This document shows, piece by piece, positions 17,707 to 42,908 of a stretch of 64,000 nt of DNA; within the stretch, counting starts at the first letter, position 1, and each line of letters opens with the position of its first letter. The stretch is taken from positions 292,866-356,865 of the IMG/VR virus record IMGVR_UViG_3300027759_004177, one strand, 5' to 3'. Made by a program: the position numbers and the translations under genes. Under the pieces are notes generated by a model. It ran no database searches, had not been told where the DNA came from, and saw only the letters and a list, made by a program, of their open reading frames with translations.

Positions 17707-17735
17707 TTGACAAACCGGCATAGTTAGTGTAAACT
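17707..17735 (+). promoter_or_regulatory. Sigma70-type promoter for the modification cluster
   Basis: TTGACA (17707-17712), 17-nt spacer, TAAACT (17730-17735), upstream of ATG 17767. Confidence 0.65.
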
Positions 17736-17750: not shown

Positions 17751-17766
17751 TCTATCCATTTTAACT

Positions 17767-18081
17767 ATGTCAGATATCAATCAACTTGTCGAGCAAGTGC
17801 GTCTTGCCACAGATTATCAAATCAACAAACAAATCTTACGTGAAAAGATCCTAACAGATCTGCATGTTGCCCATAACGGCGGGCTATTTTTTGTTACCAC
17901 AGAGTTGATCGGCTTTTTAACCACATGGCCAGATGATACAGTATACCTTGAAGATACTTATCACAATCCCATTGAAGTTGACCGAATTGAATTGTTGACT
18001 TTGTGTAGAGAACACTATCAAAAAGTAATGAACCGCTGGCATCAAGAACATGCAAAACTCAAACAGATCAGAAAAATCTAG
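17767..18081 (+). CDS. Hypothetical protein
   Basis: 104-aa ORF, first gene after the promoter, overlapping the next gene. Confidence 0.6.
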   Translation: MSDINQLVEQVRLATDYQINKQILREKILTDLHVAHNGGLFFVTTELIGFLTTWPDDTVYLEDTYHNPIEVDRIELLTLCREHYQKVMNRWHQEHAKLKQIRKI

Positions 18082-18835
18082 AGGTATTGTTGCGTTTGCT
18101 ATCAACACAGCAACCACAGACTATGCCAGCATAGCCCAGCAAACTGTTGCCTTGGCTGCTCGGGTATTAGATTTACCTTATACCATTGTCACCGAAGATC
18201 ATATGGCCCGTATGAATTGGCACAACTATAGACATGATGTAGATCTTGGCCACGAAGTTGAATGGAAAAATTTTGGTCGCAATCTCTGCTATGAGTTGAG
18301 TCCATATGATGAAACCCTGGTCATTGATGTAGACTATGTGGTACAAGATGCTGGACTATTAAAAATATTTGATTTGCCGTGGGACTACTTGTTACAACGA
18401 TCAGCTAGAAGTTTAAATGATGAGTATGTGCCTGAGGTTATGGGTGCTCACAGTTTGCCTTATGTGTGGGCCACGGTGTTTGCATTTAGAAAAACTAGCC
18501 GTGCCAAAACATTTTTTGATTTGGTGCAGAGAATTGAAGCCAACTATCACTATTATAGAGAATTGTTTAATGCGGAAAGTAGGAGTTATAGAAACGATTA
18601 TGCATTTGCCATGGCCGATGTAATACTAAATGGATTTGCTGTTTCCGATGTCAGTATACCAGGACCCATGCTCAACATACTACAACCCGTTGAATCAATG
18701 ACCGTGCAAGGCAATCGAATAGTTATTAAAGACCGACAAACTGCTTATGTGGTGCCAAGGATGAACATGCATGTGATGGGCAAAGCATATCTACAAAGCG
18801 AAAACTTCAAAGAATTTATAAATGCCGCAACATAA
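18050..18835 (+). CDS. Glycosyltransferase-like protein (GT-A fold)
   Basis: SRGIVAFA N-terminal strand, ELSPYDETLVIDVDY (DxD-type motif), WATVFAF, YRNDYAFA. Confidence 0.6.
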   Translation: MQNSNRSEKSRGIVAFAINTATTDYASIAQQTVALAARVLDLPYTIVTEDHMARMNWHNYRHDVDLGHEVEWKNFGRNLCYELSPYDETLVIDVDYVVQDAGLLKIFDLPWDYLLQRSARSLNDEYVPEVMGAHSLPYVWATVFAFRKTSRAKTFFDLVQRIEANYHYYRELFNAESRSYRNDYAFAMADVILNGFAVSDVSIPGPMLNILQPVESMTVQGNRIVIKDRQTAYVVPRMNMHVMGKAYLQSENFKEFINAAT

Positions 18836-19673
18836 AGAACAACAAGGATTTGTAACCTTTGCACAAAATACACAGGATACAGACTATCTTGACTTGGCCT
18901 ATGTACAAGCATTAAATATTAAAGCAACACAAAAGAATAATCGGTACGCAGTCATTGTTGATGCTGCTACCCGGGAGAAAGTAAATGAACGCCATCATCG
19001 TGTTTTTGATTATATCATTGATTTGCCCGTGGATCATAATGAGCCTACCAGTGCTAGGAAGTTTGCTAACGAATGGCAAGTGTTTCGTCTCACGCCATTT
19101 AAAGAAACTATCAAGTTAGAATCGGACTTGTTGTTTACACGCACGATTGATCATTGGTGGATAGCATTTAGATTAAAGAACGTTTGTCTAAGTACAGGCT
19201 GTAAAAATTATCAGGGAATTAACAGCACCATTCGAAAATATAGAGAACTGTTTGATGCAAACCATTTGCCTGATGTATATAATGGCCTGATGTATTTTAG
19301 ATTCAGTCAAGAAGCCAAACAATTCTTTGAAGCCGCACAGTATATACAAATGAATTGGTCTTATGTACGTACCGGACTTAAACAATGTATGGAAGATCGG
19401 CCCAGCACAGATGTATTGTATGCACTGGCCGCATCAATGGTTGGCCAAGAAACATGCACAATGCCCAGCATGGACTTCTTAAATTTCGTACACCTAAAAC
19501 CCGCAATCAATGGTGTGGAAGAAACTGTACCGGTAACTGATCAATTGGTTACAGAATTTGATCGTGGTATGATACGTATCAACAACGTAAATCAATTACA
19601 ACCCATACATTATTTTGAAAAAGATTTTGTAACAGCAGAAATGAAGGAGTGGTATGAGTCCAGAAATTGTTGA
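18822..19673 (+). CDS. Glycosyltransferase-like protein (GT-A fold), paralogue of ORF 18050
   Basis: QQGFVTFAQN, LTPFKETIKLESDLL, YNGLMYF, STDVLYALAA, HLKP. Confidence 0.6.
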   Translation: MPQHKEQQGFVTFAQNTQDTDYLDLAYVQALNIKATQKNNRYAVIVDAATREKVNERHHRVFDYIIDLPVDHNEPTSARKFANEWQVFRLTPFKETIKLESDLLFTRTIDHWWIAFRLKNVCLSTGCKNYQGINSTIRKYRELFDANHLPDVYNGLMYFRFSQEAKQFFEAAQYIQMNWSYVRTGLKQCMEDRPSTDVLYALAASMVGQETCTMPSMDFLNFVHLKPAINGVEETVPVTDQLVTEFDRGMIRINNVNQLQPIHYFEKDFVTAEMKEWYESRNC

Positions 19674-20022
19674 AGCATTGCGGTTAGTTGAAGAATACGA
19701 TCGTCAACGTCCCAAACTGACAACAGAGTTTAGGATATACCATGACGAAGAAGGTCGAGTCACCATGTATTGTGAAACTGCTCATCCCGACGATACCAAC
19801 TACATTGTGATAGACAATCCTGATATGTTTTTTAAAACCAATACTGGTAGGTTGCGTGTAATCGATGGAGAATTAAAGATTATCGACACACGACCAACAC
19901 GAACACATCTTGCAAAAAGCACTACAGGACAACCAGTAGTACGAGGCATGGCTGCACTGGCATTAACGCCCACAGAAGAATATCAAGACATAGAATATTA
20001 TGACAGAAAAACAATTAATTGA
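19654..20022 (+). CDS. Hypothetical protein
   Basis: 122-aa ORF overlapping both neighbours. Confidence 0.6.
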   Translation: MSPEIVEALRLVEEYDRQRPKLTTEFRIYHDEEGRVTMYCETAHPDDTNYIVIDNPDMFFKTNTGRLRVIDGELKIIDTRPTRTHLAKSTTGQPVVRGMAALALTPTEEYQDIEYYDRKTIN

Positions 20023-20899
20023 CGTTGCAGACTTAGACTGCATCTATCTAACATATGACGAACCAAACAAAGAAACAAACTGGATCCGGATACAAAACAT
20101 GGTCCCGTGGGCCAAAAGAGTAGACGGAGTTAAAGGCAGTGACGCAGCTCACAAAGCGGCTGCAGACGCTAGCGACACAGACCGTTTTATTCTTATTGAT
20201 GGTGACAACGTTCCAGATCCTGAATTTTTCAATTTACAACTGGCCCTTGACAAAACCAATGACTCTTGCGTTTTTCGTTGGAGGGCTCGCAATGCCGTTA
20301 ACGGACTGATGTATGGCAATGGTGGTATGAGTTCGTGGACTCGAGAGTTTAGCTATGCTATGCGTACACACGAAGCAACAGACGGCTCTGCAGAGAATGA
20401 TGTAGAGTTTTGTTTTTATCCCAACTACTGGGCTATGAATGATTGCTACTCAACCACGTATCCCAATGCAACACCTTATCAAGCATGGCGAGCCGGCTTC
20501 CGAGAAGGCGTTAAGATGGCCCTGGATCGTGGAGCAAAGATTTCCATGCAAGAATTTGAAAGTCGTGTTAATACTCGTAACTATGACAACTTATGCATCT
20601 GGCAAAGTGTGGGTAGCGATGCAGAGCACGGTTTTTGGGCCATATACGGTGCCAGACTTGGTACATATATGATGATGTTGGAGGGCTGGGATCATCGACA
20701 GGTACAGGACTTTGATGTGTTGGCAATGTTGTGGAGAAACTTTGAACAAGATGGCCCAGACCAATGTCGTAGCGTAGGAGATATCTTACGCACACGACTA
20801 GGCTTGCCTATTGTGGACATGGATCCTGAAGAAAGCCGATTCTTCAAACATCATTATAAATCAATGTTTAAAAATCAAGGTCCCATGGTCAGAGAATGA
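20000..20899 (+). CDS. Glycosyltransferase-like protein (GT-A-like)
   Basis: CIYLTYDEP, VDGVKGSDAAHKAAA, FILIDGDN (DxD), NGLMYGNGG, AWRAGFREGVK; paralogous to the C-terminal domain of ORF 39064. Confidence 0.55.
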   Translation: MTEKQLIDVADLDCIYLTYDEPNKETNWIRIQNMVPWAKRVDGVKGSDAAHKAAADASDTDRFILIDGDNVPDPEFFNLQLALDKTNDSCVFRWRARNAVNGLMYGNGGMSSWTREFSYAMRTHEATDGSAENDVEFCFYPNYWAMNDCYSTTYPNATPYQAWRAGFREGVKMALDRGAKISMQEFESRVNTRNYDNLCIWQSVGSDAEHGFWAIYGARLGTYMMMLEGWDHRQVQDFDVLAMLWRNFEQDGPDQCRSVGDILRTRLGLPIVDMDPEESRFFKHHYKSMFKNQGPMVRE

Positions 20900-21615
20900 A
20901 TATCTTAGTCAATGGAACTTCTATCAGTCGCGGCGAAAATTCGTGGCCATATTTTTTACAATCGCAGATGAATTGTTCTTTGATTAATCTAGCTCAGGCT
21001 GGTAGTGGCAACACGTACATACATGAAGCAACAGTAGCAGAACTCAGCGAAAGATCCTACAACCTCGTGTTAATACAATGGACATACGCAGATCGTTTTG
21101 ATTTCAGAGTTAAAGATATCAGCAAGTTCGGCGACACAACATATACAACCAACTTTCAATCCCGGCAGAACGATTGGCCTAGCAAACAAATACATCCTGT
21201 AAATGATCAAGACTACGTACAACCGGATTGGATATTTGGATGTGGGTATCTAAACGAACGCCAGGATAACAGCCTTGGCAGGGTATTTAAACCTTTATAC
21301 CAGCACGTTGGAGCAAATGAACATGTATTTTCAACTTTAATAAAAATTATATCATTGCAAAGCACACTCAAGGCCTTGGGTATTCCTTACTTGTTTACAG
21401 AATACCGCCCAATGACTCGACTAAGTCGATTCGATCAGCTTTACAAATTAATTGATTGGAATAACTTTTATTCGGGCAAACATTTATTTACTATTGCCAA
21501 AGAACATGATGCACTGGATGATACTTTACACCCATCCACGGAATGTCAGCAACTATATGCCGTTGACTTACATAACGATTTAGTTAAACGGGGATATATC
21601 AATGCAAGATCTTAG
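20896..21615 (+). CDS. SGNH/GDSL-like hydrolase or acyltransferase
   Basis: ILVNGTSIS, NLAQAGSGN, QWT, C-terminal DTLHP. Confidence 0.55.
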   Translation: MNILVNGTSISRGENSWPYFLQSQMNCSLINLAQAGSGNTYIHEATVAELSERSYNLVLIQWTYADRFDFRVKDISKFGDTTYTTNFQSRQNDWPSKQIHPVNDQDYVQPDWIFGCGYLNERQDNSLGRVFKPLYQHVGANEHVFSTLIKIISLQSTLKALGIPYLFTEYRPMTRLSRFDQLYKLIDWNNFYSGKHLFTIAKEHDALDDTLHPSTECQQLYAVDLHNDLVKRGYINARS

Positions 21616-22594
21616 CCCAAACAATCCAGCAGGTTGTCAAGATCGATTCATCTTTGATTTGAACGACAACAGAATCTGGAACATCAACGGGTTTATTAAA
21701 TTTTTAGTTGATAATCAAGGTCGAGTCATTGACATAGAGATACCCGAGGGTGTGGCGTTAGACAGCATAGGCATTTACGATTTGTTAGATTTGTTCTCAT
21801 TTAAATCGGTCACTATACGCAGTTTTAATCTAGTGCAACAATCACATCCTGTATACAAATTAAATTTTCATCCGTTGGCATTTAAATACTTTATTGTATC
21901 TCCTAATACAGATTACAGCCAATATCATGGTTGGTCTGGAAAATATATGTTTGGGGCATTTTATAATAGACCAACTTGGTCACGAATTGGCCTAGCCGCA
22001 TATTTACACACCAATCACAGTGACAAGACTCTGTTGAATTTCCGTTACGACCCTGACAATACAGACATTAGAAACACATTTGAACTAGACCAACTATTTC
22101 AAATTGACCCTAAATCCTTGGAATATTTTGGTCATCTAATACCTGCGTTGCCATTACGAGTGGAGCCCGTGGATGGGTACACCATCGGAGTCAGCACCAA
22201 AGAGCATACTGACCAACTTAGTGAATTTTATACTGACTTCTTAATTGACATTGTAAGCGAAACATTTGTACGTGGCAGATGTTTTTATCCTACAGAAAAA
22301 ACTGTTAGACCCATGCTGATGAAAAAGCCTTTTATACATATGGGACCCAAATGTTTTTTAATACATTTACGTCAAATGGGATTTCGAACGTTTGGTGATT
22401 TTTGGTCCGAGGACTATGATGGATACGGTATGGATCAGCGGTATAAGTATATACTCAAATTAATTGACACGCTGGCAGCCAAGTCCAAACAAGAACTACA
22501 AGACATGTATGCCCGTATGCAACCAATTTTAGAGCACAATTATCAATTGTTACTGACAAAACAATTTACACGAGAAATTACCTATGTTGAATAG
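21602..22594 (+). CDS. Glycosyltransferase-like protein (GT10/GT47-like C-terminus)
   Basis: DIVSETF...PTEKTVRPMLMKKPFI...LRQMGFRTF...EDYD...LEHNYQ. Confidence 0.45.
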   Translation: MQDLSPNNPAGCQDRFIFDLNDNRIWNINGFIKFLVDNQGRVIDIEIPEGVALDSIGIYDLLDLFSFKSVTIRSFNLVQQSHPVYKLNFHPLAFKYFIVSPNTDYSQYHGWSGKYMFGAFYNRPTWSRIGLAAYLHTNHSDKTLLNFRYDPDNTDIRNTFELDQLFQIDPKSLEYFGHLIPALPLRVEPVDGYTIGVSTKEHTDQLSEFYTDFLIDIVSETFVRGRCFYPTEKTVRPMLMKKPFIHMGPKCFLIHLRQMGFRTFGDFWSEDYDGYGMDQRYKYILKLIDTLAAKSKQELQDMYARMQPILEHNYQLLLTKQFTREITYVE

Positions 22595-23630
22595 CGAATA
22601 CCATGTTGGTATCAACGACAACAAGTTTTGGCGTAAAGACTTGTTAGTTATGCACCTGTACGATTGCTTAAACACCAACCAACAGCCAGCCCTGCGGGTA
22701 ACTCCAGAAGGTTCAAGCCTTGCAGGCTGTGGTTTATATAGGTACTTGGATGCGTTTTGCAAACATACTGGATACGATAAAAAGAACATCAGCATACGCA
22801 CAGGCAACATGATCGAACAACACCCTGAGTACACAATTATAAAAGATGCCACCGCTTGGTTCGAAGTTCCTATTATGCAACAATGGGCACAAAAAAATCC
22901 GATCAACACAGGCACTATGCCTAGATTACACTTTGGACACTTTGTTGGAAAAAGCAATTGGAATAGATTGTGGATTGGTGCTGTGTTGCACAGTAAATAC
23001 AATGATAAGTTATTTCAAACATATAACACCGGCATTGGTACACACTATCTTACTAAGAATGACGGCCTTTGTGATTTTGTGGGCTTAGAAGATCTGGTCA
23101 AAATGGAATGTGATCAAATTGATGTGGCTGTCGAATTTTTAAAGTCTTGTCCAAAGTTTATACCTGAGGACATAGAAGCAATTAAAAATATGTCAACTTA
23201 CATCAAACAAGACGATTACTACCCTATACAATTACCAGCCAATCTTAACATATTGAAATACTATAACAATATATTTGTGGACATTATCCATGAAACATTT
23301 GTTCGTGATGAAGTATGTTTTGCTACAGAAAAAACTTGGAGAACAATGTTAGCACGTAGGCCTTTTATTACCATGGGAGGCAGAAATCATTTGGCTAATT
23401 TAAAGCGTCTAGGATTCCGTACATTCAATGACATCTGGGATGAAGGTTACGACGAGTATGGTATGCAGTGGCGTGTTAAAGAAATACTAAAACTAATAGA
23501 TACTATCAGTTCTTGGTCAGTGGAAAAGATACAACAGGTCTTACAAGATATGCAACCTATACTAGAACACAACTATCAAACTTTTATGACACTAACACAT
23601 CAAAAAATACAGCGAACATTCAATGACTAA
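22584..23630 (+). CDS. Glycosyltransferase-like protein, paralogue of ORF 21602
   Basis: DIIHETF...ATEKTWR...RPFI...LGFRTF...EGYD...LEHNYQ. Confidence 0.45.
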   Translation: MLNSEYHVGINDNKFWRKDLLVMHLYDCLNTNQQPALRVTPEGSSLAGCGLYRYLDAFCKHTGYDKKNISIRTGNMIEQHPEYTIIKDATAWFEVPIMQQWAQKNPINTGTMPRLHFGHFVGKSNWNRLWIGAVLHSKYNDKLFQTYNTGIGTHYLTKNDGLCDFVGLEDLVKMECDQIDVAVEFLKSCPKFIPEDIEAIKNMSTYIKQDDYYPIQLPANLNILKYYNNIFVDIIHETFVRDEVCFATEKTWRTMLARRPFITMGGRNHLANLKRLGFRTFNDIWDEGYDEYGMQWRVKEILKLIDTISSWSVEKIQQVLQDMQPILEHNYQTFMTLTHQKIQRTFND

Positions 23631-24459
23631 ATTCCATTTACCTTTTGTAGAAATGATGGTTACACAATTTTGTAATCTAAGCTGTGTTGGCTGTAGTAAC
23701 TATGCTGACCTAAAACACACAGGTTATGTTCCTTGGGCAGATGGTCGGCGCGAAATAGAATCGTGGCTACCACGCATGACAATTGAAGACTTTGGTATCA
23801 TGGGTGGCGAGCCCCTGATCAATCCCGAACTTAAACAATGGATACGTGGCTTGCGTGAGTTATTACCCACAAGCCCCATACGCTTTAGCACCAATGGCGA
23901 ATTGCTAGATCGACATTTAGATGTGCTAGAAACAGCACACGAAGTGGGCAACTTTGTTTTTAAGATCACTGTACACCAACACAGCGAGCGTGTAGAACGT
24001 GTCATTGCTAAAATCTTCTCAATGTACAAGTGGGAACCTGTGTACGAATATGGCATCTATCGTTACAAAACCACAAACGGATTAAGATTTCAGGTCAATC
24101 GTCCGCTGACATTTATCAAGTATTATAAGAATGATTACGCCAACATGATGCCGTTCAATTCCAATCCTGTGGATAGTTTCAATATTTGTATGCAACAACG
24201 ATGTCCACTCATGTTCAATGGACGTATGTACAAGTGTAGTACACTAGGCGGATTGGAACAAACACTAGATCGTTTTAGTAACACCGACCCTGCATGGGAG
24301 CCATACAAAGGCAAATACATTACACCTACGAGCCCAGATGCAGATATTGCGGCGTTCTTAAACAATTATGGTCGTCCACATCAAGTGTGTACAATGTGTC
24401 CTACCGCCCAGGATGACGAAAGTGTTATTTTACATTATAATAACGTAATAACAAAATGA
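23623..24459 (+). CDS. Radical SAM protein with C-terminal Cys cluster
   Basis: CNLSCVGC, GGEP, and C-terminal C...CP...YKC...CTMC (SPASM/twitch-like). Confidence 0.85.
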   Translation: MTKFHLPFVEMMVTQFCNLSCVGCSNYADLKHTGYVPWADGRREIESWLPRMTIEDFGIMGGEPLINPELKQWIRGLRELLPTSPIRFSTNGELLDRHLDVLETAHEVGNFVFKITVHQHSERVERVIAKIFSMYKWEPVYEYGIYRYKTTNGLRFQVNRPLTFIKYYKNDYANMMPFNSNPVDSFNICMQQRCPLMFNGRMYKCSTLGGLEQTLDRFSNTDPAWEPYKGKYITPTSPDADIAAFLNNYGRPHQVCTMCPTAQDDESVILHYNNVITK

Positions 24460-25337
24460 CAAGATTCTTTGCCTTCGGGTGCTCCTTTACTAACTCTAAA
24501 AATCCTACTTGGGCTGACATAGTGGCGCACGAGTACAACCATTACCAAAACTGGGGACAGGCTGGTGCAGGTAATAGTTTTATATTCTACAGTCTAATGG
24601 AATGTAACAAGCGTAATCAGATTACTCCGGACGATGTAGTAATGATCATGTGGAGCAGCATTGGTAGAGAAGATCGTTATGTTGGAGGAGAATGGTTGAC
24701 TCCTGGTAGTATATACAATCAACAAGATTATGATGAGAACTTTGTAAAGAAGTTTACAGATCCAACAGGATACTTGTTACGAGATGCAGCACACTTGGCT
24801 GGTGCTAAAGCCATATTAGATAATATTGGGTGTCGGTATTATTTTTTTAGTATTGTTCCGTTTAATGTTCCAGACGATAACGTTTTTAAAATCTTTAGCA
24901 TAGATAATAAAATATTAAATGTTTATGCTGAAGAATTTCGATCTGTGCGTCCCAGTGTATACGAAGTTGTCTTTGATCACGACTGGTACAGCCGGGCCGG
25001 CATTAAACAAGAAGACAAGCTCAAAGAAGAATACGAAATTAAACGTGGCGATGATTGGCCCACATGGGATAAGTTTATAATACAAGACTTCGGCGGTGTA
25101 CCCAAAGATATTAAAGATGAAATAAACAACCAACACGAGTTTACCAACAGATATTTGCGTAGGTATGACACACATCCAACTCCAGCAGAATATTTAGAAT
25201 ATATCACACGAGTAGCACCAGACATAGAAGTATCCTCTGCCACACAAGATTGGGTAGCAACAGTGACTGATAGATTAATCAAACACCAAGACTTAACCAA
25301 ACTTTGGAAACCTAATAGAAAGCCTGCGAGATTCTAA
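24456..25337 (+). CDS. SGNH-like hydrolase or acyltransferase
   Basis: FFAFGCSFT, NWGQAGAGN, MWS, DTHPT. Confidence 0.55.
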   Translation: MTRFFAFGCSFTNSKNPTWADIVAHEYNHYQNWGQAGAGNSFIFYSLMECNKRNQITPDDVVMIMWSSIGREDRYVGGEWLTPGSIYNQQDYDENFVKKFTDPTGYLLRDAAHLAGAKAILDNIGCRYYFFSIVPFNVPDDNVFKIFSIDNKILNVYAEEFRSVRPSVYEVVFDHDWYSRAGIKQEDKLKEEYEIKRGDDWPTWDKFIIQDFGGVPKDIKDEINNQHEFTNRYLRRYDTHPTPAEYLEYITRVAPDIEVSSATQDWVATVTDRLIKHQDLTKLWKPNRKPARF

Positions 25338-36517: not shown

Positions 36518-37050
36518 GAATTACAGACAATTTTTATCAACTTACTGATGTGTTTAGTCCAACTCTTTATCAAAGACTGACATCTAGTTTTGATCAAGAT
36601 AGATCCGCCTGGAATCAAATTTCAGATGATAACACTGATGTAAAACGTCAACAGTTAAGTTTATCAGTCAATGAATATCTTGCACAACAGATACATGCAG
36701 AATTAAGAAAGTATGTTAGAATAGCAGAACCACGTGTTGGACCACTATATCAAAATGGTCCACAACTATGGTACGACGACAACGGCTATATTAATACTAT
36801 ACATGATGGTGATGTCAGCCCCAACCACTGTGTCAATGTACAAGTTTACCTCAGCAATGGTGCAGAAAACATGGGCACCTGTTGTTACGATGAAGGTGCT
36901 TGGCATAGTGTACCCTATCAAGCCAACTCAGGATACATGCTGATAGGTCCTACTCGTATACCGCATGGTATGCAACATCCAGTAACCAATCACAGAATGA
37001 GTTTATATCAGGGATTTAGAAACACCGAAGTACCGTCAGATATTTGGTAA
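36508..37050 (+). CDS. 2OG-Fe(II) oxygenase-like protein
   Basis: IHDGD...VQVYL...GT...YQANSGY...PHGM...RMSLY follows the DSBH layout, but the first motif is HxxD rather than HxD. Confidence 0.55.
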   Translation: MLVRITDNFYQLTDVFSPTLYQRLTSSFDQDRSAWNQISDDNTDVKRQQLSLSVNEYLAQQIHAELRKYVRIAEPRVGPLYQNGPQLWYDDNGYINTIHDGDVSPNHCVNVQVYLSNGAENMGTCCYDEGAWHSVPYQANSGYMLIGPTRIPHGMQHPVTNHRMSLYQGFRNTEVPSDIW

Positions 37051-37061
37051 AGGAAAACAAA

Positions 37062-37901
37062 ATGACACAACGTATTTTAATTATGGGCCTGCCGGGTGCA
37101 GGTAAAACAACCTTGGCTGGTGCTCTTAAAAAGTATTTGGAACAGTACGGAACAATGAGTATGTATTCTGCTGAACAACTTCCAGTAACCGGGTTTGATG
37201 CTAAGGTAACTTGGTTTAATGCTGACGATATTCGTCGTAAGTACAACGACTGGGATTTTAGCAATGAAGGACGCATCCGCCAAAGCCTACGTATGTTTCA
37301 GTTTAGTATAGAAGCCGGCGGAGAATATGTGATCTGCGACTTTGTTGCACCCTTGGTAGAAATGCGTAACAACTTCAAAGCTGATTGGACCATTTGGGTA
37401 GATACTATACGTGAAGGTCGTTATGCTGACACCAATGCGGCCTTTGTTGAGCCTGACGTGTATGACTTCCGTGTCACAGAACAAAACGCAGAAAAATGGG
37501 CTGAGTTTATTGGATCGCATATTATTGATAACCGCCGCAGGCCCACGTTTGATTGGCGGAAAGAAACTGTACAAATGTTAGGACGTTGGCAACCTTGGCA
37601 CGATGGACACCGTGCTTTGTTTGAGCGTCTAATACAACGCACAGGACAAGTAGTCATACAAATACGTGACGTACAAGGTTGGCAAGGATCAAATCCATTT
37701 GAAGTAGAAAAGGTTAAAGGCTTTATTCGTCGCGACCTAGATCCAATCTATCAAGGACAATATGAAATACAAGTGGTACCTAATATTGTACACATTGGTT
37801 GGGGTCGTGGAGTAGGATATACCAGTGGTGAAGAAACATTTGATGAAGCTGTCACAGACATCAGTGCCACAAAGATTCGTCGAGAACTAGGACTCAAGTG
37901 A
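37062..37901 (+). CDS. Fusion of an adenylyl-sulfate-kinase-like P-loop domain and a cytidylyltransferase-like domain
   Basis: GLPGAGKTT, NADDIR, DFSNEGRIRQ, ICDFVAP; C-terminal LGRWQPWHDGH (HxGH). ATG at 37062 has SD AGGA; the track starts at TTG 37044. Confidence 0.75.
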   Translation: MTQRILIMGLPGAGKTTLAGALKKYLEQYGTMSMYSAEQLPVTGFDAKVTWFNADDIRRKYNDWDFSNEGRIRQSLRMFQFSIEAGGEYVICDFVAPLVEMRNNFKADWTIWVDTIREGRYADTNAAFVEPDVYDFRVTEQNAEKWAEFIGSHIIDNRRRPTFDWRKETVQMLGRWQPWHDGHRALFERLIQRTGQVVIQIRDVQGWQGSNPFEVEKVKGFIRRDLDPIYQGQYEIQVVPNIVHIGWGRGVGYTSGEETFDEAVTDISATKIRRELGLK

Positions 37902-39065
37902 GATAGGTATAGGCAAGCCAGTTCTGACATCTAGGCGATATGGGGGTATGCGTTGAAACGCACGATCTATCGCTGTAATAGACCGAATCAAATGATCCCA
38001 TTCACGCTTGATAAACGCCGGATCATTAAATAATTGATAGTTGTGTTCTAAGACGGGTTGCATGTCTAGCAACATGGTCATTTGTTGTTCTGTGCTTAAT
38101 TCGCTAACAGTTTTTATTACTTGAGCAATAGCTTCAATACGTATTACAGGATCTTCTATTGCATCGTAACTTTCATCCCAGTAGTCACCAAATGTACGAA
38201 AGCCATAACTACGCAAATACTCTAAGTTATGGGCACAACCAGCAAGTACAAATGGCATACGAAGTACAATAGGTTTAAATATCTTTTCTGTCAAGTGTGT
38301 TTTTGTTTGAAAGAAACAGGTTTCCGTTACCAAGAATACAAAACTTTTCATCAACTCAGTCATGGGACTTAACAACATACTTTGATTAGGAATGTTTTGT
38401 CCAGCAAAATCTATACGCAACTCTGGTATCTGTTTTATGTTGGCAATAGCTTGTTCGATGTATGCAGAGTCAAATTTATATTCGGGAACACCTCGGCGTA
38501 GGTTATCATCAAACGCACCATCGTCGGGGCAATGGTGACTGTAACTTACATATCCTGAGTCTAGTAAATTGTTTTTGTACAACTCATTGACTAACAAACT
38601 ACGATACATGCGACGATTACTGGTCAACCGATTGAATGATATATAAGATTTTTCTAAAGTACGTTCGTGTGGTAGTTGTAGACCAGGAAGCATTTGGTGT
38701 CCTCGGAACCAATCGTGTGCAGCAAAAATATGAAAGAAGTAATTGATATGCAGGAATGGAAATTCTTTACAGATGCGTTTGGCTTCGTCACTGTCACGTT
38801 CAGTGGATACTAGAATAAATGGTTTTTGCTCAAGACCGGTGATGGCTTCAAACACCGGACGATTGTAATCTAAATCCAACGGCTCTTGATCATAAAAGAT
38901 AAACAATGGCCCGCGAAATTTACCTGCATCTTCGTCATTGCGTCGAAATTCAAGATTTTCTGGTAGAGTTGATCCAAAAGGATGTAGGTAAACTACCCTG
39001 GGATCTGTTATAATAGTTTGTAGGTGTTGGAATATATTTTCGTAATGACTGGATAAGTTATACAT
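37887..39065 (-). CDS. Glycosyltransferase-like protein (same family as ORFs 21602 and 22584)
   Basis: SFNRL...R, LVTET...LTEKIFKPI...PFV...LRSYGFRTF...DESYD...LEHNYQ. Confidence 0.5.
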   Translation of the reverse strand: MYNLSSHYENIFQHLQTIITDPRVVYLHPFGSTLPENLEFRRNDEDAGKFRGPLFIFYDQEPLDLDYNRPVFEAITGLEQKPFILVSTERDSDEAKRICKEFPFLHINYFFHIFAAHDWFRGHQMLPGLQLPHERTLEKSYISFNRLTSNRRMYRSLLVNELYKNNLLDSGYVSYSHHCPDDGAFDDNLRRGVPEYKFDSAYIEQAIANIKQIPELRIDFAGQNIPNQSMLLSPMTELMKSFVFLVTETCFFQTKTHLTEKIFKPIVLRMPFVLAGCAHNLEYLRSYGFRTFGDYWDESYDAIEDPVIRIEAIAQVIKTVSELSTEQQMTMLLDMQPVLEHNYQLFNDPAFIKREWDHLIRSITAIDRAFQRIPPYRLDVRTGLPIPISLES

Positions 39066-40896
39066 GTTTGATGTTTTTTACTTTGGCGATAAACCGGGCT
39101 TGTTTGCTTTTGAACAACCTGCGACTAGTCTCAAAGATGCCGCTGATAAATGTAAGACTACACACTACTGGTATATTTATGGGGGCAATGATTACACCGG
39201 CTTCGACTTTGAATACGTACCGGTACCTTGGGAAACCACGCACTTGCATGTATGGCCTAGCCAGCATCAACGCAATGGCGAAGTGTATCTAGCCAATCGA
39301 CGTACAGCACACAATCAAGAATGGCACTTCCATACAGAACAGAGTGTTGTCCGTAAGCCCGATCGCGGCATATGGCGTGTACCCGACAACATAGACGACA
39401 CAGACTTTGATTATTCATGGCATCCTGATCGTACCGAACCTGACTACGAATATCGATTTCCCACACAGTGGCAACGCGAAGGTGGTCCTGTGTATCCAGG
39501 CTCAGCCGGCGTCAAGTACATGACTGACCAACGCATACGTGCAGGCGCCACACAAATATTCTACATGGACTTTATGAATGGTGGTATAGCACGTCATCAA
39601 TTTGATTTATTAAAATTAGATCACCCTGATATCAAGCGAACACGGTATGTGGACAACCATCTCAACGTGTTCAAGCGTATTATGAACATGGCCACCACAG
39701 AATATGTATGGATCATCAGTAGCATCTGCGACTATACGCAATTTGATTTTACCTGGCACCCCAGCGAAGCACAGCGTGAAATGATCCACTGCTTTCCTTC
39801 GGGTAACCAACGTCGTGGCGACACATTCTATATACATGTCCCCAGTTTCACTCGGCAGATGTTTGAGTTAGAGCTGTTGGATTGGTTCAATGTTATCAAC
39901 TACTCAGATGATCAACAGGTAGAACGTTTTGGTATGCCGGTGCACCAATACTCAACCGACGATCTAGTAACCGAAATCAAAAACTACAAGTTCGAAACTC
40001 CTTATGTGATGTTCACTAACCAAAAGGACCTGGTGTTACATGATAGCCCTTGTTTATGGACCAAGAAAGACCGTACAGTGGTTCGTATTAGCACAGCAGG
40101 TGCTACTGCGATAGTGCCTCGAGATATCAAGGAGGATTTACGCACACAAATCTACGATTATCCTTACATTGAGGACACGAAACCCAGGTTAAACGACTAC
40201 TTAGGAGGCCGTGATTGTCTCGACATAGTCTATATCAGCAACGGTGAACCGGACGAAGAACGTTGGTATAATCATTTGTGCTATATGAGCAATACCCGAG
40301 CAAAATGGGTTAGAGGAGTTGATGGTAGAACAGCCGCTTATCAAGAAGCTGCACGTCAAAGTGCAACACCCTGGTTTTTTGCTGTGTTTGCCAAATTAGA
40401 AGTGTTGGGCAATCAGTTTCCTTGGGACTCCTGGTTACCAGACTACTTCCAAGAACCCAAACATTATATTTTTAATAGTCGTAATCCTGTAAACGGATTA
40501 GAGTATGGGCACCAAGGTGTCATTGCTTACAACAAGCGATTGGTGTTAGAGAATAACGCACCTGGCATAGACTTTACACTAAGCCAACCACACGAAAGTG
40601 TTCCTATCCTGTCAGGTACAGCACACTACAATCAAAGCCCATGGATGACTTGGCGTACCGCTTTCCGTGAAGTGGTCAAACTACGACACTTTATGGACAT
40701 AAAACCTACTGTGGAAACAGAACATAGACTCGCGACATGGTTGACTGTTGCTGAGGGAGATTTTGCTGAGTGGAGTATACGTGGAGCAGAAGATGCTGTA
40801 GCTTATTACGCAGAAGTTGCGGGAGACTATGAACAGTTAAAACTCAGCTTTGAATGGCTATGGTTGAGAGAACGATTTAATTCAAGTAAGCCGTAA
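39064..40896 (+). CDS. Multi-domain glycosyltransferase-like protein
   Basis: C-terminal domain paralogous to ORF 20000 (DIVYISNGEP, GVDGRTAAY, NGLEYGHQG, TWRTAFREVVK); internal repeats of a DYxxFDFxW/YxP motif. Confidence 0.55.
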   Translation: MFDVFYFGDKPGLFAFEQPATSLKDAADKCKTTHYWYIYGGNDYTGFDFEYVPVPWETTHLHVWPSQHQRNGEVYLANRRTAHNQEWHFHTEQSVVRKPDRGIWRVPDNIDDTDFDYSWHPDRTEPDYEYRFPTQWQREGGPVYPGSAGVKYMTDQRIRAGATQIFYMDFMNGGIARHQFDLLKLDHPDIKRTRYVDNHLNVFKRIMNMATTEYVWIISSICDYTQFDFTWHPSEAQREMIHCFPSGNQRRGDTFYIHVPSFTRQMFELELLDWFNVINYSDDQQVERFGMPVHQYSTDDLVTEIKNYKFETPYVMFTNQKDLVLHDSPCLWTKKDRTVVRISTAGATAIVPRDIKEDLRTQIYDYPYIEDTKPRLNDYLGGRDCLDIVYISNGEPDEERWYNHLCYMSNTRAKWVRGVDGRTAAYQEAARQSATPWFFAVFAKLEVLGNQFPWDSWLPDYFQEPKHYIFNSRNPVNGLEYGHQGVIAYNKRLVLENNAPGIDFTLSQPHESVPILSGTAHYNQSPWMTWRTAFREVVKLRHFMDIKPTVETEHRLATWLTVAEGDFAEWSIRGAEDAVAYYAEVAGDYEQLKLSFEWLWLRERFNSSKP

Positions 40897-41986
40897 TACT
40901 GTCAATTACAAGCTCTACTTCGGTGTCGGTCATTTCGGGATAGATAGGTAAACTCAATGCTTCTTTGCTGTGTGCTGTACTACCACGCATGATGTCTCTA
41001 GCATAATCCACATAATCCCAGCCCACTGGATGTTCAAATAAAGGTTGTTCGTAGTGTATTTTAGTTTCAATGCCTTTGCTGGCCAACATGCCTTGCATGG
41101 CACTACGTGATCCTGTACGAATAACAAACTTGTGCCAAGCATGTTCTACGTCTTGGTTGGGTAATAGCACATCCACCCAATCAGTTAAGTTTTCTATGTA
41201 CAAGTCAGCAATCTCTGCACGTCGTCGTTGCCAAGTATCAAAGTACTTTAATTTAACTAACATTTGAGCACAGTCTGAATCACTCATCTTGCTGTTGGTA
41301 CCAGCATGGTCGTGATTTAATACCTTGCCATTATCCCTAAGAGCCAGAGCAAATTGATAGATATCATAATCATCTGTGAGTATCATGCCGCCTGAACCAT
41401 AATTGTTTAGATTCTTTGTGGGATCAAAACTCAATACGCTTACATCGCCTAGTTTGCCTGACGGGATACCGTTGTAGGTGGCACCAAAACTTTGTGCGGC
41501 ATCTTCAATAATTTTGACATCTTCGTTAAAAAACTTGGTAACATTTAATAGTCTATTGTAGTCTAACACGTTGCCAAACATATTGACATACATGACAGTA
41601 TCTATGTGTCCGTCTAGGGCATAGTCAATTGTTTCTATATCCAACAAGGCATTATGGTCTACATCGCAGTACACAGGTTCATTGCCGGCCATTAACACTG
41701 AGTTAAGTGTGGCAACAAAACTAATGCCCGGGATCATGATCTTTTCTATGTCCTTGCTACGAGCAGTAGCCAATTGGGCAAACACCAGGGCTTGTGTTCC
41801 AGAGTTAACTGCCACAGCATATTGACGCATACATCGTTGAGCCATTTGTCGTTCAAACATCTGTGTATAGGGACCATCCAGTACTTGTCCCGTACGATAT
41901 GCACGGTCACTGGCATCAAGTATCTCGTCCCGGAGCAGTCGGTATTGGCGAGCTACGCCATTAAATGGTACGCTGTAGCCACTCAT
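40877..41986 (-). CDS. DegT/DnrJ/EryC1/StrS-family PLP-dependent sugar aminotransferase
   Basis: VNSGTQAL, FVATLNSV, IIEDAAQSFGA, SFDPTKNL (PLP lysine), GSGGMILT, HAWH, LSLPIYP. Confidence 0.93.
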   Translation of the reverse strand: MSGYSVPFNGVARQYRLLRDEILDASDRAYRTGQVLDGPYTQMFERQMAQRCMRQYAVAVNSGTQALVFAQLATARSKDIEKIMIPGISFVATLNSVLMAGNEPVYCDVDHNALLDIETIDYALDGHIDTVMYVNMFGNVLDYNRLLNVTKFFNEDVKIIEDAAQSFGATYNGIPSGKLGDVSVLSFDPTKNLNNYGSGGMILTDDYDIYQFALALRDNGKVLNHDHAGTNSKMSDSDCAQMLVKLKYFDTWQRRRAEIADLYIENLTDWVDVLLPNQDVEHAWHKFVIRTGSRSAMQGMLASKGIETKIHYEQPLFEHPVGWDYVDYARDIMRGSTAHSKEALSLPIYPEMTDTEVELVIDSITAYLN

Positions 41987-42908
41987 AATATTTTTGAAAA
42001 CCTTCTTCTATGTCCACACGTCCACGATAGCCAAAGTCTTGGCCGGCACGTATGGTGCTTAGTGTGCCACGACTGGGGAATCTTGGATTGGCATCGGCCA
42101 TTTTAATACGTCCGCCACCTGCAATCGCGACAGCCAGTTCTGCAGCTTCTAGTAGACTGCGGCCACAACTGCGTGTGATGTTATATGTACGTTTGGAACT
42201 GTTAAAACTAAGTGAGGCTTTGACAATACCATCAACGGCATCATCAACATAGGTAAAGTCTAAGTGTTCTTCTGCCCCGCATACCACAAGTTCTTGGTCT
42301 AGCATGGCACGGGTTAGGAACTTGCTGACCACGCGATCTTCAACATCTCGTGGTCCATACACCGCACTTGGACGTAACACGACATAATCAATTCCGGCCC
42401 GTTCACATAGATCACGTGTTAGGCTTTCACCGGCATACTTTAAAATACCATAGATACCTTTTGGATTACAACGCATATCTTCGTAGCCGTACAGCTCAAA
42501 GTCTCCGTAGACCATGCTAGAACTGATGTAAACAAATCTACGAACATCGAAGCGTTCGCTACAGCGTAATAAGTTAATCAATCCATTGGTCAATACTGTG
42601 GCGCCTTCTTCGGGATTTTCATCTACGGCTTTGGCCCTGGGAAATGCTGCACAATGTATCACAACATCAGGTCTACATTCATCAAACACATTTAGTAAGG
42701 CATTGTAGTTTTTAATGTCTACATGATGTATATCAGTCGTAGCAATACGTTCTAAACGTTCTTGATGTAGCTTGGACATTTCAGCATCAGGTACAATACC
42801 GTAGTTGGTAAAGTTATCTAGGATACAAACATTGTGTCCTTGTGCTTCAAGTTCAGCTACCACATTGTGCCCAATAAAACCTACACCACCGGTGACTAAT
42901 ATGTTCAT
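41961..42908 (-). CDS. NAD-dependent NDP-sugar epimerase/dehydratase (extended SDR)
   Basis: ILVTGGVGFIG, ISSSMVYG, YGILK (YxxxK), RPSAVYGP, DFTYVDD. Confidence 0.93.
   Translation of the reverse strand: MNILVTGGVGFIGHNVVAELEAQGHNVCILDNFTNYGIVPDAEMSKLHQERLERIATTDIHHVDIKNYNALLNVFDECRPDVVIHCAAFPRAKAVDENPEEGATVLTNGLINLLRCSERFDVRRFVYISSSMVYGDFELYGYEDMRCNPKGIYGILKYAGESLTRDLCERAGIDYVVLRPSAVYGPRDVEDRVVSKFLTRAMLDQELVVCGAEEHLDFTYVDDAVDGIVKASLSFNSSKRTYNITRSCGRSLLEAAELAVAIAGGGRIKMADANPRFPSRGTLSTIRAGQDFGYRGRVDIEEGFQKYYEWLQRTI

What the first reader, a model, noticed from the sequence alone, without database searches (positions are those of the whole stretch)
17767..42908. 25-kb phage-encoded complex-modification cluster adjoining the tail genes
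Seen: about 26 mostly overlapping genes, including about 7 GT-like, 6 radical SAM, 5 SGNH-like, a carbamoyltransferase, a 2OG-oxygenase-like gene, a kinase/nucleotidyltransferase fusion, a DegT aminotransferase and an NDP-sugar epimerase. Established: epimerase plus DegT make NDP-amino-sugars, NodU/CmcH enzymes O-carbamoylate sugars or small molecules, and some SGNH proteins O-acylate glycans. Inference: a pathway builds and decorates an unusual glycan on virion proteins, hypermodified DNA bases or the host envelope. I know of no characterised product for such a cluster. No flippase or polymerase-like membrane gene is in the block, which favours a cytoplasmic acceptor.
Basis: partly seen in the sequence, partly recalled or inferred. 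Interest (0 to 1): 0.8.

Follow-up and report, generated by a model that had tools for sequence, protein, structure and literature searches.

The report
Jumbo-phage radical-SAM glycan-tailoring operon
An uncultivated 357-kb phage carries, next to its tail-fibre genes, a conserved operon of sugar-transferring, acyl-editing, carbamoylating and six radical-SAM enzymes that probably builds an unusual decorated sugar structure inside the infected cell; neither the product nor what it is attached to is known.

Summary
The gene block is real. There are 26 ORFs in 17767-42908, and g01-g22 form one tightly overlapping + strand operon. Profile searches confirm six radical SAM genes, a NodU/CmcH-type carbamoyltransferase, a P-loop kinase/HxGH nucleotidyltransferase fusion, a DegT aminotransferase and an SDR NDP-sugar epimerase/dehydratase. 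The SGNH-like set is plausible. The '7 GT-like' count is only partly supported, and the 2OG-oxygenase call is not supported.

Five of the radical SAM genes are strong members of the uncharacterised family NF033640, which has an N-terminal twitch domain. The same core order follows the tail-fibre genes in more than 40 diverged IMG/VR jumbo-phage contigs, and partly in the cultured Ralstonia phage RsoM2USA. dN/dS is 0.04-0.16, so the genes are not decaying. None of the 31 proteins has a membrane segment. Each of the five radical SAM subfamilies has its own sister gene in a chromosomal array of a Bacteriovoracaceae MAG, so the five are an old, co-inherited set.

Best reading (about 0.45): a cytoplasmic pathway makes and heavily tailors a glycoconjugate, most likely on a virion or tail-fibre protein. 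Radical protein maturation, a small-molecule product and DNA modification are not excluded. I found no characterised counterpart.

The parts
16693..17688 (+). u16693: 331-aa protein with 28% Ser+Thr, fibre-like. It is always the gene just upstream of g01 and is sometimes duplicated. Candidate acceptor (inference only).
   Evidence: no PHROG hit
17707..17753 (+). Terminator hairpin (17717-17745, then a T-run) overlapping a sigma70-like promoter (TTGACA 17707-17712, 17 nt, TAAACT 17730-17735). It marks the start of the g01-g22 operon.
   Evidence: TTGACC-17-TATAAT with compensatory stems in relatives; z = -4.7
17767..18081 (+). g01: conserved 104-aa protein of unknown function. No Cys- or Ser/Thr-rich core, so it does not look like a RiPP precursor.
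   Evidence: RsoM2USA ORF354 at 30% identity
18050..18835 (+). g02: paralogue of g03. GT-A-like sequence pattern (xxIDVDY) only; the fold was not established.
18822..19673 (+). g03: paralogue of g02 (hhalign probability 97%); matches phrog_1903, function unknown.
19654..20022 (+). g04: conserved 122-aa protein, function unknown.
20000..20899 (+). g05: probable GT-A-fold glycosyltransferase with invariant D67-G-D69. One of the most conserved genes (64-85% identity across the alignment).
   Evidence: dN/dS 0.06
20896..21615 (+). g06: DUF6071/SGNH-like, paralogue of g17. First gene of the variable insert g06-g10.
21602..23630 (+). g07 and g08: paralogues whose C-terminal domain carries ET...TEK..RP. 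Possible GT-B enzymes of the fucosyltransferase (GT10) type. Part of the variable insert.
23623..24459 (+). g09: short (278 aa) radical SAM protein with CX3CX2C at residue 17. Part of the variable insert.
24456..25337 (+). g10: SGNH-like by its N-terminal FGCSFT motif only. Part of the variable insert.
25337..31887 (+). g11-g15: five paralogous radical SAM enzymes with an N-terminal twitch domain (NF033640). Starts at 25337, 26706, 28052, 29370 and 30580. Twitch and CX3CX2C cysteines are invariant.
   Evidence: (288-398 bits against a cut-off of 170)
31871..32956 (+). g16: conserved 361-aa core protein. The model (pLDDT 75) matches no known fold.
32934..35070 (+). g17, g18, g19: three SGNH/DUF6071-like proteins with GDS or GCS in block I.
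35036..36517 (+). g20: NodU/CmcH-type carbamoyltransferase.
36508..37050 (+). g21: unknown 180-aa protein, found in only a few relatives. The 2OG-oxygenase call is unsupported.
37044..37901 (+). g22: fusion of an APS-kinase-like P-loop kinase and an HxGH nucleotidyltransferase.
37887..39065 (-). g23: third member of the g07/g08 family; shares the C-terminal domain.
39064..40896 (+). g24: 610 aa. The C-terminal domain is homologous to g05 but lacks the DGD motif; the N-terminal 380 aa are unknown.
40877..41986 (-). g25: DegT/DnrJ/EryC1 sugar aminotransferase (best NCBIfam model PseC, below its cut-off).
41961..42908 (-). g26: extended SDR, an NDP-sugar epimerase or 4,6-dehydratase.
Possibly related to the pathway.

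Best explanation
The block is a functional, conserved phage operon (g01-g22, plus g23-g26) that makes and heavily tailors a glycoconjugate in the cytoplasm of the infected cell.

Proposed flow; only the enzyme families are shown by data, and every step is inferred:
1. The SDR (g26) and the DegT aminotransferase (g25) make an NDP-amino-deoxy-sugar.
2. The kinase/nucleotidyltransferase fusion (g22) makes a nucleotide-activated donor. Its P-loop-kinase-plus-HxGH architecture parallels PAPS synthase, CoA synthase and the Campylobacter Cj1415/Cj1416 pair.
3. Soluble transferases attach sugars to a cytoplasmic acceptor: g05, perhaps g02/g03, and g07/g08/g23.
4. The five N-terminal-twitch radical SAM enzymes (g11-g15), plus the short g09, each carry out a different radical C-H-activating step such as oxidation, epimerisation, dehydration or C-C/C-X bond formation.
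5. The SGNH-like proteins add or remove O-acyl groups.
6. The NodU/CmcH-type enzyme (g20) O-carbamoylates a hydroxyl.

The most likely acceptor is a virion protein, probably a tail-fibre-type protein such as the Ser/Thr-rich product of 16693-17688. The accessory genes that vary between relatives would then diversify the decoration.
For: - Enzyme families are established by profile searches.
- The core order tail fibres - u16693 - g01-g05 - g11-g15 - g16 - SGNH - g20 - g22 is kept in more than 40 diverged IMG/VR contigs, with variable inserts.
- dN/dS is 0.04-0.16 for every gene tested.
- 20 of 21 junctions overlap, and the operon has its own promoter.
- No protein has a convincing transmembrane segment.
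- g05 is GT-A-like. The g07/g08/g23 domain has a GT10 lead, and other phages fuse structurally similar domains to NDP-sugar epimerase/dehydratase.
- The twitch domain matches that of BtrN, a radical SAM enzyme acting on a sugar-like substrate.
- In a bacterial MAG, a family member sits among three GT2, one GT4, GDSL lipases and other radical SAM genes. Another lies near an epimerase, an RmlD-type reductase and a GT2.
- Link to fibres: in the cultured phage RsoM2USA, at only 30-37% identity, the same head of the cluster (g01, g02, g03, g05, a g11/g12-type radical SAM enzyme, a second g05-like gene) directly follows a fibre-N-terminus-like gene. This is inside the tail module, and an SDR gene lies between the tail sheath gene and a virion protein gene.
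Against: - No product or acceptor has been observed.
- Most 'GT' assignments are weak. There is no Pfam or PDB sequence match, Foldseek E-values are about 1e-2, and hhalign against GT2 is not significant.
- The operon starts behind a terminator with a sigma70-like promoter. That promoter type is otherwise seen in this window only before three of the minus-strand non-structural genes and before none of the fibre genes, so co-expression with fibres is not shown.
- Cellular relatives of the radical SAM enzymes are often fused to TPR or Sel1 repeats, and they form arrays without any glycosyltransferase nearby. Among 136 neighbouring ORFs, 23 are radical SAM and only about 7 are glycosyltransferases. 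The radical SAM substrate may therefore be a protein rather than a sugar.
- Adjacency to fibre genes may be inherited synteny among related jumbo phages.
Confidence: 0.45

Rival explanations
1. Radical maturation of a protein. The five N-twitch radical SAM enzymes modify amino-acid residues of a phage protein, for example a fibre, by cross-links, epimerisation, C-methylation or oxidation, as SPASM/twitch maturases do for peptides and proteins. The sugar enzymes would add a separate decoration or be secondary.
For: - Most characterised SPASM/twitch enzymes act on peptides or proteins (established knowledge).
- Cellular family members are fused to TPR or Sel1 protein-binding repeats.
- The Bacteriovoracaceae chromosome has an eight-gene array with a small secreted Sel1-repeat protein and no glycosyltransferase within 10 kb.
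- In bacteria the commonest neighbours are further radical SAM/SPASM genes.
- The Ser/Thr-rich fibre-like gene always lies next to the operon.
Against: - No precursor-like small ORF was found. g01 is a conserved globular-looking protein without a Cys/Ser/Thr-rich core.
- No RiPP recognition element, leader peptidase or transporter is present.
- The enzymes are far more conserved (60-85% identity) than the fibre proteins (about 40-60%).
- The only PDB match to the twitch domain is BtrN, which acts on a small molecule.
Confidence: 0.2
2. A free small molecule. The operon would make an aminoglycoside-, nucleoside- or oligosaccharide-like metabolite, or a nucleotide-linked one, during infection, for host takeover, counter-defence or competition.
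For: - The enzyme set mirrors aminoglycoside-type pathways: a twitch radical SAM enzyme (BtrN-like), a DegT aminotransferase, a TobZ/NodU-type carbamoyltransferase, glycosyltransferases and an SDR.
- All proteins are soluble.
- The operon has its own sigma70-like promoter, like the presumed early genes.
- In RsoM2USA the two halves of the pathway lie 95 kb apart, so the whole pathway need not be tied to fibres.
Against: - There is no scaffold-forming enzyme, for example no 2-deoxy-scyllo-inosose synthase-like gene, in the window.
- There is no exporter or self-resistance gene.
- The head of the cluster stays next to fibre genes in two lineages.
Confidence: 0.15
3. DNA hypermodification. The transferases and tailoring enzymes would decorate bases in phage DNA to evade restriction.
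For: - Phage DNA-modification clusters are known to combine glycosyltransferases, P-loop kinases, PLP enzymes and radical SAM enzymes (own knowledge of Lee et al. 2018; Pyle et al. 2024 as cited in PMC12619734).
- The block abuts nucleotide-metabolism genes (ThyA, DHFR), and 11 relatives have a dCMP deaminase inside it.
- The acceptor is cytoplasmic.
Against: - ThyA is canonical: 352 bits to PF00303, with the ALPPCH and PFNIASY motifs. It is paired with DHFR, which indicates ordinary dTMP synthesis.
- The window has no hydroxymethylase-type thymidylate-synthase homologue, no dNTP pyrophosphatase and no known DNA glycosyltransferase family.
- The rest of the 357-kb genome was not examined.
Confidence: 0.08
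4. Modification of the host envelope (LPS, capsule or peptidoglycan), for superinfection exclusion or release.
For: Enzymes of glycan-cluster type are present, and SGNH proteins and carbamoyltransferases are known to decorate surface glycans (established knowledge).
Against: None of the 31 proteins has a convincing transmembrane segment or signal peptide, and there is no flippase, polymerase or lipid-carrier transferase. The phage is a virulent-type jumbo phage, and no lysogeny genes were seen in the window.
Confidence: 0.05

Closest known systems
NCBIfam NF033640, 'twitch domain-containing radical SAM protein' (N_Twi_rSAM)
   Same: g11-g15 score 288-398 bits against a cut-off of 170. They have the N-terminal Cys-rich twitch domain followed by the CX3CX2C radical SAM core.
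   Different: I found no characterised member of the family, so it gives no function. Here five distinct subfamilies are kept together in a phage.
BtrN (butirosin 2-deoxy-scyllo-inosamine dehydrogenase), together with the DegT aminotransferase BtrS and TobZ-type carbamoyltransferases of aminoglycoside pathways
   Same: The twitch domain of the g11-g15 profile matches the BtrN twitch domain (E 7e-4). DegT and carbamoyltransferase families are both in the block.
   Different: The domain order is permuted: the twitch domain is N-terminal here and C-terminal in BtrN. Identity is very low, there is no inosose synthase, and the context is a phage.
Mycobacteriophage virion O-glycosylation (Freeman et al. 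2023, as cited in PMC12619734)
   Same: Phage-encoded soluble glycosyltransferases lie beside structural genes and decorate virion proteins in the cytoplasm.
   Different: To my own knowledge those clusters are small and lack radical SAM enzymes, carbamoyltransferase, SGNH proteins and nucleotide-sugar synthesis. No glycan has been shown here.
Giant-virus (Mimivirus) fibril glycosylation gene clusters (own knowledge)
   Same: The virus makes its own NDP-amino-deoxy-sugars (a 4,6-dehydratase plus a DegT-type aminotransferase) and has many glycosyltransferases for a virion surface glycan.
   Different: Those are eukaryotic viruses, and no radical SAM set is present. I recalled this resemblance and did not test it with sequences.
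'Nol-like' carbamoyltransferase auxiliary genes of cyanophages and pelagiphages (phrog_1601)
   Same: g20 matches phrog_1601 at E 5e-95. tblastn finds relatives in 142 phage records.
   Different: Those genes have 26-30% identity, stand alone or in other contexts, and are also of unknown function. The closest are RsoM2USA (46%) and a marine single-cell virus contig (49%).
Phage DNA hypermodification clusters (T4 glucosylation; thymidine hypermodification in ViI/M6-type phages)
   Same: They combine transferases, a P-loop kinase, a PLP enzyme and radical SAM chemistry, and act in the cytoplasm.
   Different: The window has no pyrimidine hydroxymethylase. ThyA is canonical and sits with DHFR.

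Membership tests
NF033640 N_Twi_rSAM | Whole-protein score above the curated cut-off (170 bits) | tested here: met
   g11 305, g12 295, g13 398, g14 330, g15 288 bits. g09 scores only 31 bits and is not a member.
NF033640 N_Twi_rSAM | CX3CX2C cluster motif plus N-terminal twitch cysteines | tested here: met
   In g13 numbering, C40, C100, C103 and C154/C158/C161 are invariant in both paralogue alignments. The CC pair C58/C59 is kept in most sequences: C59 is invariant and C58. The N-terminus matches Pfam SPASM and the BtrN twitch domain.
Carbamoyltransferase NodU/CmcH/TobZ (PF02543 + PF16861) | Both domains above Pfam gathering scores | tested here: met
   132 and 164 bits against cut-offs of 24 and 27.
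NodU equivalog NF041651 | Score above 1000 bits | tested here: not met
   139 bits. g20 belongs to the superfamily but is not NodU itself.
DegT/DnrJ/EryC1 aminotransferase | Pfam PF01041 above the gathering score | tested here: met
   261 bits. No NCBIfam equivalog is reached (PseC 173 bits against 423.5), so the sugar specificity is unknown.
Extended SDR NDP-sugar epimerase/dehydratase | PF01370 / PF16363 above the gathering score | tested here: met
   157 and 109 bits. No equivalog is reached, so epimerase and 4,6-dehydratase cannot be told apart.
SGNH/GDSL hydrolase-acyltransferase | Pfam GDSL or DUF6071 above the gathering score | tested here: inconclusive
   Only g18 passes DUF6071 (32 bits against 27). 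g06 and g19 fall below it, and g10 and g17 have no hit.
SGNH/GDSL hydrolase-acyltransferase | Block I Ser near the N-terminus and block V D-x-x-H | tested here: inconclusive
   All six candidates have G-x-S within the first 25 residues. A clear block V is present in g28 (DGLHPNREGH), and a possible one in g06 and g17. g18 and g19 have GGHPLE-GH instead.
GT-A glycosyltransferase (g05) | DxD motif and Rossmann-like GT-A fold | tested here: inconclusive
   D67-G-D69 is invariant in 16 orthologues. The model (pLDDT 74) matches almost only GT-A enzymes, but at E 6e-3 (PDB) and 2e-3 or weaker for named viral glycosyltransferases. There is no Pfam GT hit, and hhalign against GT2 gives probability 1%.
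GT-A glycosyltransferase (g02, g03, g24 C-terminal domain) | DxD motif and fold | tested here: inconclusive
   For g02/g03 there is only a motif-level resemblance, with no significant profile match. The g24 domain is homologous to g05 but lacks DGD.
GT10-type fucosyltransferase (g07, g08, g23) | Match to Pfam PF00852 and the conserved E...TEK donor-binding motif | tested here: inconclusive
   No Pfam hit. The motif ET-x8-TEK-x2-RP is invariant or nearly so. The nearest named Atlas clusters are GT10 at 0.79, which is a lead only.
2OG-Fe(II) oxygenase (g21) | Profile match and the HxD/E...H facial triad | tested here: not met
   No hit in Pfam, PHROGs, NCBIfam or PDB, and no standard triad pattern.
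Wzx/Wzy- or ABC-dependent surface polysaccharide locus | Membrane initiating transferase, flippase or polymerase | tested here: not met
   No convincing transmembrane segment in any of the 31 proteins.
Phage DNA hypermodification cluster | Pyrimidine hydroxymethylase (a divergent thymidylate-synthase homologue) or another base-precursor enzyme | tested here: not met
   The only thymidylate-synthase homologue in the window is a canonical ThyA paired with DHFR. The rest of the genome was not examined.
RiPP gene cluster | Precursor peptide next to the radical SAM maturases | tested here: inconclusive
   g01, g04 and the 33-aa ORF at 33703-33804 show no core-peptide features. A full-length protein substrate cannot be excluded.
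Phage virion glycosylation system | Glycan demonstrated on virion proteins | not testable with these tools
   This needs glycoproteomics. RsoM2USA is the available cultured relative.

The most novel reading that the evidence does not exclude
An ancient, co-inherited set of five N-terminal-twitch radical SAM enzymes performs five successive radical tailoring steps. The set is shared between a large clade of environmental jumbo phages and predatory Bacteriovoracaceae. In the phage it acts together with soluble transferases, acyl-editing enzymes and a carbamoyltransferase, and yields a new chemical class of radical-SAM-modified glycoconjugate, either on virion or tail-fibre proteins or as a free phage-made metabolite. 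That chemistry is not known from any virus.
Probability: 0.3. Interest if true: 0.85.

Novelty: new variant of a known kind. Interest (0 to 1): 0.72.

Why it matters
Virus-encoded glycosylation is known for mycobacteriophages, giant viruses and T-even DNA. No described case uses a battery of radical SAM enzymes.

The family involved (NF033640) is large and, as far as I could find, has no known function. There are 24,404 representatives at 50% identity with E <= 0.001 in 1.84 billion proteins.

The phage operon is compact, highly conserved and free of membrane proteins. It shows which five subfamilies work together and with which partner enzymes. The cultured relative RsoM2USA makes the question testable by experiment.

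If the product sits on tail fibres, it bears on host recognition, virion stability and escape from adsorption-blocking defences in a very abundant group of environmental jumbo phages.

Tried and rejected
- Megablast of the whole block against 50,697 phage records found no match.
- tblastn of g07 and of g16 against phages found nothing.
- Profile searches of PDB sequences for g05, g07/g08, g16, g02, g24 and g21 gave nothing significant.
- The AlphaFold model of g16 (pLDDT 75) has no Foldseek match in the PDB, and the ESM Atlas gave no lead.
- hhalign of g02, g03 and g05 against a small GT2 profile built from bacterial neighbours was not significant. In each case the best local alignment fell on the DxD region.
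- hhalign of g16 against the 320-aa ORF of the Bacteriovoracaceae array showed no relation.
- Literature searches on phage, radical SAM, glycan, carbamoyltransferase, N-terminal twitch and SPASM returned nothing relevant. The 'moraphage' paper (PMC12619734) reports four putative glycosyltransferase orthogroups among its core orthogroups but never mentions radical SAM or carbamoyl; I did not test whether it is the same lineage.
- The motif CTATACTRT looked like a promoter shared with fibre genes (3 hits, all upstream of + strand genes). I rejected it as a distinct motif: at g01 it lies just after, and overlaps by two bases, the -10 (TAAACT) of a sigma70-like promoter, and 9 of 100 shuffles gave at least 3 hits.
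- The T4-type late promoter TATAAATA is absent from the window.
- There is no tRNA and no Rfam family in the window.
The genome scan with the too-diverse alignment A8 failed.
- No such tool was offered, so that note had no effect.

Full report
**Origin and setting**

The window is part of IMG/VR contig IMGVR_UViG_3300027759_004177 (356,865 bp). A 352,116-bp ENA assembly carries the identical g13 protein with the same gene layout around it, and a third IMG/VR contig is 88-100% identical over these genes. Upstream of the flagged span lie a 2996-aa virion protein (phrog_10938) and several tail-fibre genes. The N-terminus of the giant protein finds Atu_ph07, SCTP-2, PA5oct and Rak2-like jumbo phages at about 30% identity. 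Downstream, on the minus strand, lie thymidylate synthase, DHFR and other non-structural genes. Megablast of the block finds nothing among 50,697 phage records. This is therefore an uncultivated jumbo myophage.

**The observation**

Twenty-six ORFs fill 17767-42908; I call them g01-g26. On the + strand, 20 of the 21 junctions from g01 to g22 overlap.

Profile searches confirm the following:
- A short radical SAM protein, g09.
- Five 405-460-aa radical SAM paralogues, g11-g15.
- A carbamoyltransferase with both NodU/CmcH domains, g20.
- g22, a fusion of an APS-kinase-like P-loop (GLPGAGKT) and an NMNAT/cytidylyltransferase-like half carrying HDGH.
- A DegT aminotransferase, g25.
- An extended SDR, g26.

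The SGNH-like set (g06, g10, g17, g18, g19, plus g28 outside the span) rests on weak DUF6071/GDSL hits, on paralogy and on a conserved G-x-S block I. g28 has a textbook block V.

The '7 GT-like' count is the weakest part of the observation.
- g05 has an invariant DGD. Its AlphaFold model (pLDDT 74) matches almost only GT-A enzymes in both the PDB and BFVD, but with weak scores. Its neighbours in the ESM Atlas include a cluster named 'Glycosyltransferase 2-like'.
- g07, g08 and g23 share a C-terminal domain with an invariant ET...TEK..RP motif. The nearest named Atlas clusters are GT10 fucosyltransferases at 0.79, which is a lead only. Structurally similar phage proteins are fused to NDP-sugar epimerase/dehydratase domains.
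- g02 and g03 are homologous to each other (hhalign probability 97%), but nothing identifies their fold.
- The C-terminal domain of g24 is homologous to g05 but has lost the DGD motif.
- None of the 31 proteins has a convincing transmembrane segment.

**The radical SAM enzymes**

g11-g15 are strong members of NCBIfam NF033640, 'twitch domain-containing radical SAM protein', at 288-398 bits against a cut-off of 170. The Cys-rich auxiliary-cluster domain is N-terminal. Its only match among PDB sequences is the C-terminal twitch domain of BtrN, so the domain order is permuted relative to BtrN. The twitch cysteines and the CX3CX2C cysteines are conserved across the paralogues.

The family is very large. 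A profile search of 1.84 billion representatives gives 24,404 proteins at E <= 0.001. These include tandem fusions of two or three units (800-1466 aa) and fusions to TPR or Sel1 repeats. I found no paper describing a member.

**Conservation**

Scans of viral contigs returned 74 loci carrying g13 relatives. In more than 40 of them the order is the same: tail fibres - u16693 - g01-g05 - g11-g15 - g16 - SGNH genes - g20 - g22 (- g23/g24 - g25/g26 - ThyA). Each radical SAM orthologue is 60-85% identical to the window's copy. g06-g10 are present in only a subset. Other accessory ORFs, among them extra radical SAM genes and a dCMP deaminase, are inserted at various points. This is a conserved core with a variable periphery.

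Pairwise dN/dS is 0.04-0.16 for every gene that could be tested.

**A cultured relative**

Ralstonia phage RsoM2USA is the only record in the phage collection with homologues of g05, the g11/g12-type radical SAM enzymes and the closest g20. Its ORF354-348 are g01, g02, g03, an unmatched 184-aa ORF, g05, a g11/g12-type radical SAM enzyme and a second g05-like gene. They directly follow ORF355, whose N-terminus resembles the window's fibre proteins. All of this lies inside the tail module: ORF361 is a giant structural protein, ORF359 the tail sheath, ORF358 a g26-like SDR and ORF356 a virion protein confirmed by MS. A second locus 95 kb away holds a g12-type radical SAM enzyme (51% identity), three SGNH-like genes and the carbamoyltransferase (46%). 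Vibrio phages K566 and K567 have at least four N-twitch radical SAM genes in another context.

**Cellular relatives**

A scan of one genome per species returned 79 loci. The best few (L100, L103-L107) carry the whole phage cluster and are evidently phage contigs binned into MAGs. The rest are bacterial, and many are Bacteriovoracaceae or other Bdellovibrionota.

I scanned 136 nearest-neighbour ORFs from 35 such loci. Of these, 23 are further radical SAM proteins, 12 carry SPASM domains, and only about 7 are glycosyltransferases. One bacterial MAG places a Sel1-fused member among three GT2, one GT4, two GDSL lipases, TPR proteins and other radical SAM genes. Another locus has an epimerase-methyltransferase, an RmlD-type reductase and a GT2 nearby.

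A Bacteriovoracaceae chromosome has an eight-gene array next to rplU, rpmA and obg, with no glycosyltransferase within 10 kb. A maximum-likelihood tree puts one gene of that array as sister to each of the phage g11, g12, g13, g14 and g15 clades. Four of those pairings have support 98-100; the g13 one is weaker (about 83-87) and includes other bacterial sequences. The five subfamilies therefore predate the phage clade and travel together.

**Transcription**

A hairpin at 17717-17745 (z = -4.7), followed by a T-run, sits between u16693 and g01. It overlaps a sigma70-like promoter, TTGACA-17-TAAACT. In relatives the promoter is often a perfect TTGACC/TTGACA-17-TATAAT, and the stem changes by compensatory substitutions. 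Elsewhere in the window, promoters of this type matching 11 or 12 of 12 positions lie before three of the minus-strand non-structural genes and before none of the fibre genes. g01-g22 is thus its own transcription unit, and co-expression with the fibres is not shown.

**Interpretation**

Shown:
- The block is a selected, conserved and entirely soluble multi-enzyme operon.
- It combines nucleotide-sugar enzymes, probable transferases, acyl-editing enzymes, a carbamoyltransferase and six radical SAM enzymes.
- It is linked by position to fibre genes in two lineages that share only about 30-37% identity.

Inferred:
- It assembles and tailors a glycoconjugate on a cytoplasmic acceptor.
- The acceptor is most likely a virion or fibre protein. 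I put this at about 0.45.

The main rival is that the radical SAM pentad works on protein residues rather than on sugars. The TPR/Sel1 fusions and the glycosyltransferase-free arrays support it. It could also hold alongside glycosylation. A free metabolite is possible, given the aminoglycoside-like enzyme set and the early-type promoter. DNA modification is unlikely because ThyA is canonical (ALPPCH and PFNIASY motifs) and is paired with DHFR. Envelope modification is unlikely without membrane proteins.

**Novelty**

Virus-encoded glycosylation is a known kind of system. A version built around five co-inherited subfamilies of an uncharacterised radical SAM family, with a carbamoyltransferase and multiple SGNH proteins, has no described counterpart that I could find. 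I rate it a new variant of a known kind, with a real chance that the chemistry is new.

Noticed in passing
L112 / L178 (Bacteriovoracaceae bacterium UBA6144, DIVA01000093.1), locus coordinates 6055-18051 of L178: A chromosomal array of eight N-twitch radical SAM genes lies next to rplU, rpmA, obg and rsfS. It also holds a 110-aa secreted Sel1-repeat protein and a 320-aa unknown ORF. Each of the five phage subfamilies has a sister gene in this array.
   Followed up: partly
P0121-P0270; P0154, P0185, P0189, P0181: Many family members are tandem fusions of two or three N-twitch radical SAM units (800-1466 aa), or are fused to TPR or Sel1 repeats.
   Followed up: partly
L099-L107 (genome contigs): Contigs carrying this phage cluster are binned into MAGs labelled Polynucleobacter, Legionellales, Haliscomenobacter (contigs of 183 and 148 kb), Betaproteobacteria TMED41, Verrucomicrobia TMED56 and Rickettsiales. 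These are probably phage contigs within the MAG bins. At best they are weak hints about the host.
   Followed up: no
window 17707-17753, and upstream of g01 orthologues in L005-L088: A compact terminator hairpin carries the -10 of a sigma70-like promoter in its loop. It is conserved across relatives through compensatory stem changes.
   Followed up: partly
window 54712-54684, 53067-53038, 62010-61982 (minus strand): Perfect or near-perfect sigma70 consensus promoters (12/12, 12/12 and 11/12) lie 18-67 nt upstream of minus-strand gene starts. No fibre gene has one.
   Followed up: no
window 11-9001: A 2996-aa virion structural protein (phrog_10938, E 1e-198). One stretch also matches a head-closure family (phrog_460).
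   Followed up: no
window 11270-12616: A 448-aa protein with 28% glycine, including a poly-Gly run, lies among the fibre genes. It has partial matches to phrog_2295 and to a 'major head protein' family.
   Followed up: no
window 39064-40896 (g24): The g05-like domain (residues 386-578) has lost the DGD motif that is invariant in g05. It may be catalytically inactive or repurposed.
   Followed up: partly
L060:10000-10677 and 10 other related loci: In 11 relatives a dCMP deaminase gene sits inside the cluster, between orthologues of cluster genes. It is absent from the window.
   Followed up: no
window 33703-33804: A 33-aa, very basic ORF fills the only gap in the operon, between g17 and g18, and ends 4 bp into g18. 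Public gene calls include it as well.
   Followed up: no
window 46060-47145 and 47145-48422: About 1.1 kb has no ORF of 100 aa or more. It is followed by a 425-aa HNH endonuclease (phrog_1314, E 4e-109). No tRNA or Rfam family lies there.
   Followed up: no
L002 (Vibrio phage K566, OZ196521.1, ORFs 303-308 and 322): At least four N-twitch radical SAM genes sit in a different context, among NAD-salvage genes (NadV-like, PnuC-like, NMNAT) and a PagP-like gene.
   Followed up: no
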